NCBI GenBank assembly: GCA_004764695.1
Contig: SMSO01000035.1
Coordinates: 3,484,040-3,548,039, forward strand
Length of the DNA stretch: 64,000 bases
DNA from: Schizochytrium sp. TIO01
Taxonomy: Eukaryota > Protista > Bigyra: Labyrinthulomycetes
Direction: 5' to 3'
The number at the start of each line of letters is the position of its first letter. Position 1 is the first letter of the stretch. Below, piece by piece: positions 10,825-20,067 of this stretch. A program made the translations under genes and the position numbers. The notes under the pieces were generated by a model. The model was not told the origin of the DNA, did not search any database, and saw nothing but the letters and a program-made list of their open reading frames with translations.

Positions 10825-11451
10825 ACCGCGCCTGCTGCCGCGCCTTTCTGCGGGTGCCCTGCGTCTCACTTGAGCCCTGAGCTGAGCTGAGGGTTCCCTC
10901 AGTAGCCTTATCCTGGGCCTTATCGTCTGCGCCTTTTGGTTGTTCCTCGTGCGTTCCCTCGCTCTTCTCTACCACAAGCCTTCGTTAATGGCCCCACACC
11001 TCTTCCTCCTTCTCCACTGGCCACTTGCCCACCTACTAAAGTATTGGAAGCTGAGTGACCTTTACCCAGTGGACACGGACGGACAGCCCTACTGTGTCCC
11101 CACCTGTGCTCTATGCTTCAGATTTCGCAGCCGCGGGAACCCGTCTTTGGATCCAGCTGGAAGCTGCGCAAAGCCGACGAGCACGCTTTCCTTTCTTGTG
11201 GTCCTGCCTTTTCCTTCTTTTCCTTCTTCGCCTTCTTTTTGCTTTCCTGTGCTGCTCTGCTCTTTCTCCTTTCTTGAGCTCGCTTTCTTCGCGGCTCCCT
11301 CACTGACTTCCTCCCTTCCTTCCTTGCTTGCTTGCTTCCTCTTTGTTTCTTTCTTTGTGGTGGAAAGCTTTCTCGCCAGCAAGTGGAGCACAGGACCAGC
11401 CAGGCTAGGCACACAGGTCACGACCGCCGCCAGCCTCGCGATGGTGCTGCT

Positions 11452-11524
11452 GTCTTCTTGAAAGTCTTCTTGAAAAGGTCTTCTTGAAAAGGTCTTCTTG
11501 AAAAGGCCTTCTTGAAAGTCTTCT
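11452..11524. repeat. Tandem 12-14 bp minisatellite (GTCTTCTTGAAA[AG]) x5
   Basis: gtcttcttgaaa, gtcttcttgaaaag x3, gccttcttgaaa, gtcttct. Each full unit carries TTCTTGAA. Confidence 0.9.
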
Positions 11525-13237
11525 AGTTCTTGTTCTCCTTTGTTGAGTTTGTTTGTCTCTGGAGTTCGCTCTCTCTCTGGGCAGCTCTCACCTGACCCGC
11601 TTCTGACTCTGGGGCGCTTTCCCCCGTTTCTGTTCGTCTGCGTGCGACGGAGAGGAACGAATGTGGCTTGAATTGCAGTCAAGTCTCCTGATGCTCACTT
11701 TCGCTCAACGCTTTCCTTGGATGTTTCTTCGTATTCGCCAGCTTTCGAGAAGAAGAGAGCTTCTCGTCGATGACGCTGAGCAGCTGCAGATTATATGTAT
11801 GTATATAGATATAGGTATAGATAGATAGATATATATATATATATCGAGCGCGAGATGGGGGGAGACAGAATGGGCGAGCGGATGAACGCAAGCGCCCTTG
11901 TCCAACCGACTAAGAAAATGCGCTGGGATCACTGATTTCAAACAAAAACCAAAAAATCGCCAGCGCCGGAGTTGGTGGTGCCTAAAAATTCCCACAATTT
12001 TCCAAGACGAACAATTTCCGAACCACGAAACCAAAGAAACGCCCAGAGAAATAAACACCAAGCAGCCAAGCAGCCAAGCAGCCAACGATCAATAACCAAT
12101 AATCAACAGAAACACGAAAAGAACGCCGAGCGCCGCGAGATAATGAACGGTGGCTGAGAAGAACAAATGCACGAAGCAAGCGACAACTGAAGATGGAAAC
12201 CACACAACGAAAAGAGCCAAACCGCTAAACACAAGCTAGCAGACCCTCTCCTCTCACAACAGGGAAATAGATATACACACACACTCACCCACCCACCTGC
12301 ACACACTGATACCCTCCTTTCACAGAGAGACAGACACGCACTCACTCACAGAGGGATAAAGAGTCGAAGCCGCGTGGAGATGAGAGACGGCGGCTCTGCT
12401 TCACTCACAGCAGTTGTGCGCTTCGAGAAGCAAGGGGCCTCTGCCTGCTTGCCGCCAACACACAGCTCGCCGGCGCGTGGGTGGGAGTCCCTTCAGGAGC
12501 TGCCTCCAACGCTGCTGTCTTCGCGTTCCTTCGCGTTGGGCTCTGTCGGTTCCCAGCGAAGTCCGCTTCTTCTGGTCCTGGTTCTCGCCGTCGCTGTCGT
12601 TGCCGCTGTTTGCTTCTTCGTACGCTTACGCTTCTGCTCCTTGTCTTGTCTTGTCTTGTCTTGTCCTGTCTAGTCCAGAGCCCCGAGCAGACTGCCCACT
12701 GGCGAGCGACGACGGGAGGCAAGGAAAGAAATGCGGAACAAAGCAAAGCGAACCAGCGAGCAAAACGAAAGAAGCAGAGAACCGCGGCGGGCGTTCTCTT
12801 TCTGCCGCGCGGAGAAAGAACGCCGCAGTAGAACCAGCAGACTCGATCTGGCCGGACTCAACAACGATGAACTAATCTAACCAACTCAACTCACTCACCT
12901 CTGAGGCGCAGGCTCTGGAAACCGAACTTCGAGGTCCGCTTCTGCAGACAGGATCGAGTAGAATCGAGTAGAATCGAATCGAATCAAAGAGACTCGATGG
13001 ATGGATATCCAAATCCCACTTATTGCAAACAGCCTGCTGGTTGGTTTGTTGTTGTTTAGCCCAGGCCAGCACCGAATGCACCTCCGACGATAGAGTTTCA
13101 ACCAACGGAGAAACCGCAAGCAAGTCGATATGTTTGCGAGTCAAATCAGCAAGAGCTGGGCCCGAGTTCGCTAAATCCCGGCTCAACCCACAAACAGACC
13201 GGTGCTCGCGTGTCTTGTTTTCTAAAAGGCAGCGATA

Positions 13238-16700: not shown

Positions 16701-17739
16701 TACCCACGTGATCTCTCGCTTCGCTTCTTGCTGGCAAATATAAGCTACGCCACAGCTGTTCGCAGAGACAGAGGCAGGAGTGAATCACAAGGCCTGGAAT
16801 TAAAAGCGGTCTGTCTCGTTCGTTTGGCCCTTTTGATCCCTCACGCAATGCTCTGCCACTGACTGCTGCCGCTTTTGACGTGCCCCGAAGAAGTTCGAGG
16901 TAGGCTGCCACCACAGAATAATAAATATCCAGACGGCTCGGATTGATATCTATCTATGTATCTATGTATCTATCTGTCTTGATGATTGACTCGATGAACC
17001 AATGCAATGCGTCGAGCGTAAGGATCAATGGGCGGATGGGTGTTTCTTTCTTCGTCCACAAACCCAACCAAACCAACCGAGAGCGAGTGAGCGAGTGAGC
17101 GAGTGAGTGAGTGAGTGAGTGAGTGATATTCAACGGCACAAGCCAACCTCTGCCCGTTTGGAATCGAATCAGCTCAACCCGAGCTCCTCCAATCGCCGCG
17201 ATCGAAAGAAAGGTTAGCGTTATGGGCCAATTTGAGTGGATCTGCCTGCCTCGGGCGGTTACTCGGCTGCTTGTTCACGCTGACGACGATGCCGTTCTCC
17301 AGGTTCCCTCTGTGCGGGAGCGAAGGGTGGGGCCGCAGTGGGCTGGAGCAGCACGGCGACCGCTTGGCTCGCTCGCGTGCCTCCGCCTCAGCTTACCCGG
17401 GATATCCACGGCTCGCTCGCGGGCGACCTCCTCGCGAAGGCGCGCTCGCCTTCCCGCGGGCTCGAGGGCGCCTAGCGATAGCCTATCAAGGCCTAGCGGC
17501 GAGGGCAAGCTCCCAAGAGGCGGCGCCAACTATGCTGGACTCCCTCAGCCGGGCCCTCGTAGCTCCCAGGCGCTGGTTCGCTAAGAGATTCCTCGATATG
17601 GCACTCAGCGGCGAAAAAACAGTCACTGCGGGTCCCGAGTGTGGGAATACAGCACGGTAACCCCACAGATCTTCGTTTAGCTAGCTCGCCTTGTTGATTT
17701 CTCCGGGTTTGGCTCAAACTGCTCAAAAGTCTGAGGGCT

Positions 17740-17763
17740 GATCGATCGATCGATCGATCGATC
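17740..17763. repeat. (GATC)6 self-complementary repeat
   Basis: Directly visible. Confidence 0.9.
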
Positions 17764-20067
17764 TCTTCGCCTTCTCGAGACCAAGCTCGCGCCTTCCCTC
17801 CGTGCGGATCCGGCTGCCTTTCTGACGCAGGGAAAGTCCGCCGCTGCCTAGACGCCTGGCTGGGCAGGCTTTGCTCGCTCGCTTGCCTGCTTGCCCAGCT
17901 AGCTAGCTAGCTAGCTAAGCTCGAAAGCAGGAACTCGAGACGCCGCTGCCGAATGGCCACTCTTCGCGGGGCGGCCGCCCGGCTGCGAGCCCGGCCTGGC
18001 CGCCCCTACTTCAAGGCCGCCGCCTCGGCTTGATCGCGCTGCCGTGAAGTAGCTTGAGCTCGCTCTGCGAGGCCTTGCGCAGTGGGTTGGCCCAGGCGCT
18101 GCAGAAATGGAGGCAAATGCAGCGAGCGATGATGCGAGAGATAGATCGATTGTTGGCTTCTGCGAAAGGAAGCCACCGCTCTGCGGGAGACACAGGCGAG
18201 AGGCGCGAGAGATGGGTGCCGGCTGCCTACCAGCGCGTCGCGCTTGTCTCTTGGTGAGGCTTGAGCCTGCTGGACGTCGCAGCCCCGCGACCGTCGTAGT
18301 CGTTGTTTTGCCGTCGCTGCTGATAGAAGGATCGAGGGATTGATTGCTCTATTTATTTATTTATTTATTTATTCATTTATTGTTGTTTCCCTCTTTTACT
18401 TCTTCTCTTCAAGTTTTTAATTTCTTCCTTTCTTCCTTCCTTTCTTTATTTCTTTCTTTCTTTCTTTCTTTCTTTCTTTCTTTCTTTCTTTTAATCTCTC
18501 CTCCCTCTCAATTTTCACAAGTTATAAAAAAGGAAAGCTCTGAAAATAAAAATAAAAACGTGTTTATTTTTTTTATTTGCTTTTATATGCTTAAAGAAAA
18601 TGTTTAGCTTGGGGGGGGAGGAGAATCATTTAAAATTTGAAGACATGTAAATTGAAATGAAAGAGATAATAATGAATATCATCCTTACAGAGAATATAAA
18701 TATATATTTATAATAGAAAAGAAAAGCAGAGCCAAGCGAAGCAAGAGAAAGAAAGAGATAAATCCATCTGCTTTAAAGTTGAATGTCGTAGCCCTTACAA
18801 GGAGAAGAGCGAAGGCAACCTTTTCTGCTTCGTCTCCGCGACTTCGCTCTGTGCAGCGCTGCCTCTGTATCTCTCGCCGGCACTGACACCCGCTTCATCC
18901 CTCATGGTCGCGTGGTTGATTACTTTGAAACCAGCCTTGCCCTGTCTGCCGTAAACAGAGTGAACTAGACGAGCAAGGGAACCGGTGATTGAACGGCGCG
19001 AATGCTTCACCTGCTTGCTTGGCTTGCCTGACCTTGGCGAAACAGCCAGAGTGATAAACTGACTGACTGACTGACTGACTGACTGACTGACTGACTGACT
19101 ACGAGAGCCCACCAGGCTGTGTACCGGCGCGGCGACTAGTGGGCTCCGCCGGGCTGTTGTAGAGCAAGTTTGCCTTAGTTGTGCAGCCCTGAGCAATCGG
19201 AGAGCGAGAGTTAATGAGCTAGTTAAACTATGTTTTTGTTTTGTTTTGTTTTGTGTTATTATAATGTATTGATTACTTAAAAGTAAATATTCCTCATCGT
19301 ACTTGGATGAGTTCAATAATTTTCCTTGTCTAAGTTACACTGGCTCAAGCTCAGCCTACGAATATAGATGTGATGGTTGAAATAGAGGCATATCCTCTCT
19401 TTTTTGGTCTTCCTAACGTAGTAATTGCGCTTTTAAAATGCCAGTAGGCAGCACTTTAATTTAATTTTAATTTTAATTTTAAACATTAATACATTTTTAT
19501 TACTTATTTATTTATTTATTATTTATGTAGTAATCTTTCACTCATCGGTGCGCTCTCACTAGTCAGAGGTCAAGAACTAAAATCCTCTCAAACCAGAGCA
19601 GCCACTGGAATCAGTTCATTTTTTCCATCAGGGTGCCAACCATTGTACTTCATATCCAAGATTTCTTGTCTACCATATACAAGGTATCAATCATTTGGGG
19701 ATATGCTTTTCTTCCGGGCAAAGCAAGCAAAATAGTTTCTAAAGCTATTATTATTTTCAGTATTATTTGAATAGAATAAATGTAGAAAACCATAATATTT
19801 GGAGGTAGGGCGATTTTAATTTACTGGAATGAGAAGAAACAATCTACCATTCTACTCAGCTGGTGGTAGGGTCAGTCAGTCATTTCTTCGTCTGTCAGGA
19901 TCTATTCGCCCTATTATTATTCCTCAGCTGCGCCTCCTTCCTTGCACAGCTCGCATTCCACCTGTCTATACAAACTCGACCTGAAGAACTCACCAGAGCC
20001 TCCGAGTTCTCAGGAAGATTGCTTTCTTTGAACAGGAAATGACAAGATCTGCCAACCTCCGCAATTT

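What the first reader, a model, noticed from the sequence alone, without database searches (positions are those of the whole stretch)
10825..18373. About 7.5 kb strand-specific AUG desert upstream of the MYB gene: candidate giant scanned 5' UTR
Seen: reading the + strand from 10825 to 18373 I found no CAT, meaning no ATG in any frame on the MYB sense strand. The first CAT is at 18374-18376, where a GC-rich block gives way to an AT-rich tract, and CAT is common beyond it. The + strand has dozens of ATGs in the same interval, so base composition does not explain it (about 118 expected per strand under uniform composition, 7549/64). Established: upstream AUGs are selected against in 5' UTRs because 43S complexes scan from the cap; introns and promoters are not under this constraint. 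Inference: the whole block is exonic leader, with a TSS near 18.3 kb, giving a multi-kb, microsatellite-filled 5' UTR that ribosomes still scan. That is far beyond ordinary eukaryotic leader lengths and points to a translational control system for this transcription factor.
Basis: partly seen in the sequence, partly recalled or inferred. Interest (0 to 1): 0.92.

Follow-up and report, generated by a model that had tools for sequence, protein, structure and literature searches.

The report
Giant AUG-free leader before Myb gene
A 7.5 kb stretch in front of a Myb transcription-factor gene of a thraustochytrid protist has no ATG at all on the gene's strand (about 89 expected), most likely because it is an enormous mRNA leader that ribosomes must scan; if RNA data confirm this, it would be far longer than any natural scanned leader I found described.

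Summary
The + strand of 10825-18373 (7,549 nt) has 0 CAT but 77 ATG. On the gene's strand, ATG is the only strongly depleted trinucleotide (0 observed, 88.8 expected, P about 3e-39). Near-cognate codons are not depleted, and all three frames are full of stops. The run ends at the first ATG of a 1,488-aa R1R2R3 Myb ORF. It begins where gene-like GC drops into an AT-rich tract. In 264 kb of contiguous genome, no run free of any trinucleotide exceeds 2.4 kb. The best reading is a giant unspliced scanned 5' leader kept AUG-free by purifying selection. This is an inference. The public runs were available only as contigs that could not be shown to be RNA, so the transcript, its start site and its splicing remain untested. 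Ordinary genes here have AUG-free stretches of 117 nt (median), and a tail of genes, including enzymes, has 1.2-1.6 kb or more. The scan found the same feature before on other DNA of this genome (1-3.7 kb leaders; an 8.7 kb ATG-free coding stretch). This is the longest non-coding case. The organism is probably Aurantiochytrium limacinum.

The parts
10825..18373 (-). AUG-free block: inferred giant 5' leader of the Myb mRNA. 7,549 nt, GC 0.52, 15% tandem repeat, 74-84 stops in each frame.
   Evidence: 0 sense ATG against 88.8 expected, and 77 antisense ATG against 78 expected. Near-cognates are not depleted; repeat share and 1,306 one-step mutational paths to ATG.
10822..10824 (-). First AUG on the sense strand after the desert. 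It is the start codon of the Myb ORF, in context GGT ATG G (G at -3, G at +4).
   Evidence: In 57 local genes, purine at -3 occurs in 41 of 57 and G at +4 in 22 of 57.
6358..10824 (-). Myb gene ORF: 1,488 aa in a single open frame, low-complexity (rich in S, G, A, R, Q), with the stop codon at its low end.
   Evidence: ORF. (PF00249 4e-44 with three stretches; PF13921 1e-33). (0 stops in frame against 15-58 in the other frames).
6427..6843 (-). Three tandem Myb repeats (R1R2R3) at the C-terminus.
   Evidence: own-genome hits C34:3490466-3490882, converted to window coordinates..
8833..10821 (-). Met-free N-terminal 663 codons. AUG avoidance continues inside the ORF: one ATG (10601-10599, out of frame, 16-codon ORF) against 11.6 expected, up to the strong in-frame ATG at 8835-8833 (ACG ATG G). 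This may be a leaky-scanning track to a shorter 825-aa isoform.
Evidence: P about 1e-4.
18374..18720 (-). 5' boundary. The first upstream ATG (18376-18374) opens a 3-codon ORF (MNK). Beyond it lies an AT-rich tract with (AAAT)n, (GAAA)n and a TATAAATATATA element near 18700-18712. This is the inferred promoter/TSS zone; the TSS itself was not mapped.
13239..13517 (-). (GATT)~70 microsatellite inside the leader. No rotation of the unit contains ATG on the sense strand.
13919..14013 (-). (CATT)n-like microsatellite on the sense strand, which is (AATG)n on the antisense strand. The ATG-bearing orientation falls on the non-transcribed sense.
11792..11844 (-). (TA)n/(TATC)n tract about 1 kb upstream of the start codon. 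It could be an internal, proximal promoter, which is relevant to the rival reading with nested start sites.
   Evidence: Sequence only; not tested.

Best explanation
The 7.5 kb block is the unspliced 5' leader of the Myb mRNA, or of its longest isoform. Transcription starts in or just below the AT-rich tract at about 18.4-18.6 kb. 43S pre-initiation complexes load at the cap and must travel the whole leader to reach the first AUG at 10824. Any new AUG in the leader would capture them, or would create a uORF that exposes the mRNA to decay, so purifying selection removes every AUG on that strand while microsatellites and point changes turn over freely. The genome is gene-dense and intron-poor, so a long upstream transcribed region cannot be removed as a 5'UTR intron and has to be kept AUG-free instead. 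The gene is the extreme member of a genome-wide class of kilobase AUG-free leaders in this thraustochytrid. Shown: the statistics, the strand and codon specificity, the boundaries, the non-coding nature of the block and the existence of the class. Inferred: transcription of the block, the position of the TSS, the lack of splicing, and scanning of the full length.
For: 0 against 88.8 expected sense ATGs, with ATG the only strongly depleted trinucleotide. CTG, GTG, TTG and ACG are at 0.93-1.44 of expectation, and antisense ATG is 77 against 78. The run is a lone outlier among all 64 trinucleotides in 264 kb. It ends at the first ATG of a 1,488-codon open frame in good context. It starts at a GC 0.52 to 0.40 boundary, and the block has gene-like GC. 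No frame is open: 74-84 stops per frame. No Rfam family matches in the block. Baseline: 57 local genes show sense ATG-free upstream stretches with median 117 and 90th percentile 476 nt, against 39 and 143 nt for the antisense control. This shows ordinary scanning selection in this genome, with a tail at 1.6 kb and at least 1.2 kb before two other Myb genes. Each of these has 0-1 sense ATG against 8-24 antisense ATGs. Strain contigs are collinear with the genome across 14019-18319 with no splice-like joints, and none of 40 listed strain SNPs creates a sense ATG. 5.8% of all possible substitutions would create an ATG, so the desert must be actively maintained.
Against: There is no direct RNA evidence. 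The runs are contigs whose RNA status is only guessed, their coverage pattern equals that of a probable DNA run, and nothing could be learned about the TSS. The SNP test has little power (1.6 expected, 0 seen). The leader is not depleted of structure (MFE -32 kcal/mol per 120 nt, z -0.68; palindromic (GATC)n and (AGCT)n repeats), whereas structured leaders strongly inhibit translation in yeast (PMC12415969). No orthologous locus could be fetched, so conservation of the desert is untested. A TA-rich tract 1 kb upstream of the start codon could be a proximal promoter.
Confidence: 0.65

Rival explanations
1. Nested leaders. The block holds several start sites or promoters, for example a distal one near 18.4 kb and a proximal one near the TA-rich tract at 11.8 kb. 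Most mRNAs carry leaders of 1 kb or less, and the full 7.5 kb is traversed only by a rare or condition-specific isoform. The union of all isoforms still has to be AUG-free.
For: A TA-rich microsatellite lies about 1 kb upstream of the ATG, and the leader has an AT-richer stretch at 13-14 kb. The other long leaders in this genome cluster at 1-3.7 kb. A structured 7.5 kb leader should be costly to scan (PMC12415969).
Against: Selection strong enough to remove all of about 75 expected AUGs from the distal 6.5 kb requires distal-start transcripts to matter for fitness. No ATG-density step is seen inside the block: the count is 0 throughout.
Confidence: 0.22
2. The block is transcribed on the Myb strand but is not scanned from a distant cap. 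It might be an upstream non-coding RNA or read-through transcript kept free of AUGs to avoid translation and NMD. Alternatively, ribosomes might enter internally or by shunting, with AUG loss reflecting some other RNA-level constraint.
For: No direct evidence. The idea is allowed because the transcript structure is unknown and the leader is structured.
Against: Internal entry or shunting would relax the constraint on bypassed segments, not impose it, yet the desert is complete and ends exactly at the ORF's first AUG. A separate ncRNA has no known reason to be purged of AUG alone while keeping near-cognate codons and stops. The same pattern stands directly in front of start codons of other genes.
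Confidence: 0.08
3. Chance, base composition, low complexity or an assembly artefact.
For: 15% of the block is microsatellite.
Against: P is about 3e-39 under a composition-matched model. The antisense ATG count is as expected. 85% of the block is non-repetitive. Contigs of independent runs reproduce the sequence at 95-100% identity.
Confidence: 0.005

Closest known systems
Ordinary eukaryotic scanned 5' UTRs with upstream-AUG depletion (Kozak scanning; purifying selection on uAUGs, e.g. PMC7889888 abstract)
   Same: Strand-specific, AUG-specific depletion directly upstream of the main start codon. The same signal appears at small scale before ordinary genes of this genome.
   Different: Length. 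PMC12415969 (introduction) cites median leaders of about 50 nt in yeast and about 200 nt in human. Here the leader is 7,549 nt with zero AUG, about ten times the next-longest in 264 kb of the same genome.
Long leaders of apicomplexan mRNAs (Plasmodium falciparum: PMC12526063, PMC4687322)
   Same: Unusually long 5' UTRs in a protist, raising the question of how ribosomes cover the scanning distance.
   Different: By those papers' abstracts, the Plasmodium leaders carry multiple upstream AUGs and uORFs. This leader carries none, so it implies plain uninterrupted scanning and not uORF bypass.
uORF-controlled transcription-factor mRNAs (GCN4 / ATF4 type; PMC3201031 abstract)
   Same: A regulatory protein with a long leader, which suggests translational control.
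   Different: That mechanism depends on uORFs. Tested here: there is no uAUG in 7.5 kb. At most there is a 3-codon ORF at the extreme 5' boundary.
Toxoplasma BFD1, a Myb-like differentiation factor with a multi-kb uORF-bearing 5' UTR under translational control
   Same: A Myb-family factor behind a kilobase-scale leader in a protist.
   Different: A different lineage and Myb type, a leader reported at about 2.7 kb with uORFs, and no homology shown here. It is a lead only.
Other AUG deserts in this same genome noted by this scan (s1-824477 ATCase 2.2 kb; s1-831098 3.66 kb; s1-834105 C2H2 3.45 kb; s1-851769 AP2 3.2 kb; s1-831053 8.7 kb ATG-free coding stretch)
   Same: The same strand-specific ATG absence leading to a start codon, in the same organism. 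My own sample independently shows the class.
   Different: This is the longest non-coding case reported so far. The 8.7 kb case lies inside an ORF. Those notes are AI notes that I did not re-test.
Designed long unstructured leaders in yeast reporters (PMC12415969)
   Same: They show that length alone need not block scanning: a 50 to 500 nt increase costs about two-fold.
   Different: They were tested only up to 500 nt and only for unstructured sequence. This natural leader is 15 times longer and structured.

Membership tests
Scanned eukaryotic 5' leader (5' UTR) | Lies directly upstream of, and on the same strand as, the first AUG of a protein-coding ORF | tested here: met
   The run ends at 10825, and the ATG at 10824-10822 opens a 1,488-codon frame.
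Scanned eukaryotic 5' leader (5' UTR) | Strand-specific depletion of AUG but not of other triplets | tested here: met
   0 against 88.8 expected. The next-lowest observed/expected ratio is 0.38 (AAT). Antisense ATG is 77 against 78.
Scanned eukaryotic 5' leader (5' UTR) | Non-coding | tested here: met
   74-84 stops per frame, and the longest open stretch is 278 codons of low-complexity sequence.
Scanned eukaryotic 5' leader (5' UTR) | Present in the mature mRNA, continuous with the CDS (transcribed, not spliced out) | tested here: inconclusive
   Contigs of runs guessed to be RNA cover 13735-18319 collinearly without splice-like joints, but they look the same as a probable DNA run.
Scanned eukaryotic 5' leader (5' UTR) | Capped transcription start at its 5' end | not testable with these tools
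   Contigs cannot show RNA ends, and the AT-rich boundary zone 18340-18750 is uncovered in every run, including the DNA run.
uORF-mediated translational control (GCN4/ATF4 type) | One or more AUG-initiated uORFs in the leader | tested here: not met
   There is no ATG in 7,549 nt. The only candidate is the 3-codon ORF at 18376, at or beyond the 5' boundary.
R1R2R3 (3R) Myb transcription factor | Three tandem Myb/SANT repeats | tested here: met
   PF00249 matched three times (E 4e-44). Three hits at window 6427-6843. The best database relatives match only the Myb domain at 37-46% identity, so the subfamily is not assigned.
Genome-wide class of kb-scale AUG-free leaders in this thraustochytrid | Other genes of the same genome have sense-strand ATG-free stretches of 1 kb or more that end at their start codon, with normal antisense ATG density | tested here: met
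   1,587 nt and 1,099+539 nt in the 200 kb flank. At least 1,269 and at least 1,209 nt before two Myb paralogues, cut off by the locus ends. 0-1 sense against 8-24 antisense ATGs.

The most novel reading that the evidence does not exclude
Thraustochytrid ribosomes routinely scan kilobases, and here at least 7.5 kb of structured, microsatellite-rich RNA, from the cap to the first AUG. If so, this is the longest natural scanned leader known to me. It would be the extreme of a genome-wide class in which an intron-poor genome keeps long upstream transcribed regions in the mature mRNA and purges them of AUG instead of splicing them out. The AUG-poor 2 kb that continues into the ORF would then be a second, leaky-scanning track to a shorter Myb isoform.
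Probability: 0.5. Interest if true: 0.85.

Novelty: new variant of a known kind. Interest (0 to 1): 0.72.

Why it matters
How far, how fast and by what motor a 40S subunit can scan is still debated. PMC12415969 argues for one-dimensional diffusion, based on leaders of up to 500 nt. A natural mRNA whose sequence shows selection for an AUG-free path of 7.5 kb would set a new upper bound for scanning range. It would also be a ready-made test object. If the leader is scanned, inserting an AUG at defined distances should abolish Myb output, and 40S footprints should spread along the whole leader. It would further show that an intron-poor eukaryote can carry very long leaders at the price of continuous purging of AUGs. 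In practice, strand-specific ATG-free runs could then be used to predict transcription units and true start codons in thraustochytrid genomes, which are used industrially for DHA production and are poorly annotated.

Tried and rejected
(1) Orthologous loci. The protein search with Myb residues 900-1488 found only generic Myb-domain matches at 37-46% identity and no self-hit or orthologue. The exact 1,488-aa product is not in the collection.

I did not walk the genome through other tools. Statistics therefore rest on 264 kb plus 30 Myb loci of 3.1 kb each.

(3) RNA evidence. The look-up of sequencing runs listed no run on record as RNA. Read laying on 13530-18900 returned contigs only, broken at microsatellites, with the same piece pattern in X4 and X6 as in the probable DNA run X19. 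The apparent 'joints' at 14444, 17740 and 17897 are repeat-mediated and also occur in X19. There is no verdict on TSS or splicing.

(4) Strain SNP test: 0 of 40 create a sense ATG, 1.56 expected, not significant.

(5) Selection against RNA structure: not seen.

(6) Shared leader motif. CCGCAG/CCCGCAG is enriched and strand-biased in this leader but absent from six other long leaders, so it was rejected as a class signal.

(7) Rfam: only a tRNA at 4741-4811 and nothing in the leader.

(8) Protein atlas for taxonomy: uninformative.

(9) Literature. Six searches found no report of multi-kb AUG-free leaders or of thraustochytrid leaders. The A. limacinum centromeric-plasmid paper uses diatom sequences and says nothing about native centromeres.

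(10) The coccidian guess (Toxoplasma-like) made on first reading was dropped after the flank proved gene-dense and intron-poor and an identical flank protein carried an MMETSP0958 header.

(11) The third homologous-protein search was left unused because no query would have been decisive.

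
Full report
OBSERVATION. Window 10825-18373 (7,549 nt) holds no CAT and 77 ATG on the + strand. The bounding CATs are at 10822-10824 and 18374-18376, and further CATs follow from 18627 at normal density. 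Read on the minus strand, this is 7.5 kb without a single ATG in any frame.

I compared it with every other trinucleotide. The next-longest run free of any triplet is 1,766 nt in the window. In 264 kb of contiguous genome (the window plus 200 kb of left flank) it is 2,426 nt, inside a simple-repeat patch that lacks nearly all triplets. The second-longest ATG-free run, 1,765 nt, is the N-terminal coding part of the same gene.

A first-order Markov model of the leader's own sense strand predicts 88.8 ATGs, and 200 simulations gave a mean of 88.9, sd 9.0 and minimum 65. ATG is the only strongly depleted triplet; the next-lowest ratio is AAT at 0.38. The near-cognate codons CTG, GTG, TTG and ACG stand at 0.93-1.44 of expectation. 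CAT on the same strand is 77 against 78 expected. P(0 | 88.8) is about 3e-39. Tandem repeats make up 15% of the block, and 53 of the 77 antisense ATGs lie outside them. Composition and low complexity therefore do not explain the run.

ANATOMY. The desert ends at the first ATG (10824, context GGT ATG G) of a 1,488-codon open frame on the minus strand. The frame carries three Myb repeats at its C-terminus (PF00249 E 4e-44; window 6427-6843). The block itself is non-coding, with 74-84 stops in each frame and no Rfam family. Its GC content (0.48-0.61 in 500-nt windows, apart from an AT-richer 13-14 kb stretch) is like that of genes. At 18.37 kb it falls to 0.35-0.44 and stays there for about 32 kb. 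The boundary zone holds (AAAT)n, (GAAA)n and a TATA-like element. The first upstream ATG, at 18376, opens only a 3-codon ORF.

AUG avoidance continues into the ORF. The first 663 codons are open (0 stops, against 15 and 24 in the other frames) but hold one ATG where 11.6 are expected. That ATG is out of frame and opens a 16-codon ORF. The next one is a strong in-frame ATG at 8835.

ORGANISM. The genome is 64.07 Mb in 37 contigs, and the window is C34:3,484,040-3,548,039. The flank is gene-dense and intron-poor, with about 55 ORFs of at least 300 aa in 200 kb. A flank protein is identical to an MMETSP0958 transcript product whose header gives TAXON_ID 87120. That taxid is a basidiomycete and a digit swap of 87102, Aurantiochytrium limacinum. 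From memory, MMETSP0958-0961 are that species. Two earlier follow-ups of this scan also call the organism a thraustochytrid. I treat the species as probable, not proven.

IS IT A CLASS? For 57 ORFs of at least 250 aa in the 264 kb, the sense-strand ATG-free stretch upstream of the first ATG has a median of 117 nt and a 90th percentile of 476 nt. The antisense control gives 39 and 143 nt. Background ATG spacing is 58-59 nt on both strands. So ordinary scanning selection is visible over a few hundred nt.

Beyond that there is a tail. One case is 1,587 nt, then a 4-codon uORF, before a 515-aa protein with no Pfam match. Another is 1,099 nt, an 11-codon uORF and a further 539 nt, before an amine-oxidase-like flavoprotein. 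A third is 783 nt before a KDM5-like gene in the window.

About 50 Myb genes exist in the genome. Within the 1.5 kb flanks supplied, two of them are ATG-free for at least 1,269 and at least 1,209 nt up to the locus edge, and several more for 600-840 nt or longer. All these leaders have 0-1 sense ATGs against 8-24 antisense ATGs, and gene-like GC.

Earlier notes of this scan list further deserts of 1-3.7 kb before AP2, C2H2, channel, AdoMetDC and ATCase genes, plus an 8.7 kb ATG-free coding stretch. One follow-up concluded that these form a genome-wide class. I did not re-test those places, but my own sample shows the class independently. The Myb leader is about ten times the next-largest upstream stretch among the 57 genes of my 264 kb sample, and it is the longest non-coding case noted so far.

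MECHANISM. The only process known to act on AUG alone, on one strand, up to the first AUG of an ORF, is cap-dependent scanning (Kozak; PMC2115416 abstract), together with its consequences of uORF capture and NMD. Introns and promoters are not under that constraint. So at least one fitness-relevant transcript must carry the entire block as exon. In an intron-poor genome, the simplest form is one unspliced leader starting near 18.4-18.6 kb.

5.8% of all possible substitutions in the leader would create an ATG (1,306 paths). About four new ATGs are therefore expected per 1% neutral divergence, and the desert must be actively maintained. Strains in public runs differ from the window by about 1% plus small indels, and their contigs are collinear with it. 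None of the 40 listed SNPs creates a sense ATG, but only 1.6 were expected, so this test is merely consistent.

WHAT IS NOT SHOWN. No run is on record as RNA. The single read-laying run returned contigs that break at microsatellites. X4 and X6 show the same pieces and flat depth as the probable DNA run X19. All runs, including X19, lack the AT-rich boundary zone. Their small total sizes (18-39 Mb against 64.5 Mb for X19) hint that X1, X4 and X6 are transcriptomes, and the uniform depth along 14.0-18.3 kb would then fit one transcription unit. That is a hint only. The TSS, the continuity with the CDS and the absence of splicing therefore rest on inference.

The leader is not selected for low structure (mean MFE -32 kcal/mol per 120 nt, z -0.68 against dinucleotide shuffles). 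Structured leaders strongly inhibit translation in yeast, and designed leaders have been tested only to 500 nt (PMC12415969). This is a real difficulty. Either the organism has strong helicase support, or the full leader is scanned inefficiently, which could itself be a throttle.

The main rival is a nested set of start sites, for example a proximal one at the TA-rich tract 1 kb upstream of the ATG, so that the 7.5 kb path is used rarely or conditionally. This is a matter of degree, not of kind.

COMPARISON AND NOVELTY. The feature works like any uAUG-depleted 5' UTR. It differs by one to two orders of magnitude in length from the median leaders cited in PMC12415969 (about 50 nt in yeast, about 200 nt in human). 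It differs from the long, AUG-rich leaders of Plasmodium (PMC12526063, PMC4687322). It is not a uORF device of the GCN4/ATF4 type, because there is no uAUG. Six full-text searches found no description of multi-kb AUG-free leaders or of thraustochytrid leaders. I class it as a new variant of a known kind.

The inference of a control system special to this transcription factor is not supported, because enzymes and other genes share the feature.

Noticed in passing
window 18400-50500: About 32 kb of AT-rich (GC 0.35-0.44), ORF-poor sequence starts exactly at the leader's 5' boundary, in an otherwise gene-dense, intron-poor genome. Only five stop-free frames of at least 200 aa are present, and the four scanned have no Pfam match. 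It could be a gene desert, a centromere-like region or a decayed mobile element.
   Followed up: partly
window 9941-18186, minus strand: CCGCAG / CCCGCAG is enriched and strand-biased on the Myb sense strand: 9 sense against 2 antisense in the leader, about 1.3 expected. It also occurs at 10853, 10812, 10649 and 9941 around the start codon. It is absent from six other long leaders, so it is specific to this gene. Its function is unknown.
   Followed up: partly
L010:323-1909 (+), upstream of ORF L010:1983-3527: A 1,587-nt sense ATG-free leader, then a 4-codon uORF (MQLR) and about 60 nt, before a 515-aa protein with no Pfam match. The protein contains a basic 'ERERERRAAVRNLF' segment that looks HLH-like to the eye.
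   Followed up: partly
L013:7462-9102 (+), upstream of ORF starting at L013:9103: A 1,641-nt leader with a single ATG (an 11-codon uORF) before a 576-aa amine-oxidase-like flavoprotein. This shows that long AUG-poor leaders are not confined to regulators.
   Followed up: partly
L033 and L045 (G000:C13:3097389-3100523; G000:C35:1380516-1383641): Two other Myb genes have sense ATG-free stretches of at least 1,269 and at least 1,209 nt that run to the edge of the fetched locus. The true lengths are unknown.
   Followed up: partly
window 50765-51549 (+): A KDM5-like gene (PLU-1 + PHD, 2,355 aa from the ATG at 51550) has a 783-785-nt ATG-free upstream stretch, the second-longest among 57 local genes.
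   Followed up: no
window 17740-17765, 17897-17917, 13240-13275: Palindromic microsatellites (GATC)n and (AGCT)n lie inside the leader. They can form hairpins, and they caused repeat-mediated false joints in contigs of all runs.
   Followed up: partly
flank protein L022:1031-3343 (P0138): The MMETSP0958 header carries TAXON_ID 87120 (Rhizopogon burlinghamii), apparently a digit swap of 87102 (Aurantiochytrium limacinum). This is a database error worth knowing about.
   Followed up: yes
window 6358-10824 (-): The exact 1,488-aa Myb product is not in the 15-billion-protein collection, and no near-identical protein of 818-2,604 aa was found, although the neighbouring genes' products are present. 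Gene callers may mis-model this gene, possibly because of the Met-free N-terminus.
   Followed up: no
window 4741-4811 (+): A tRNA gene lies between the TLDc gene and the Myb gene (Rfam RF00005, 63.4 bits).
   Followed up: no
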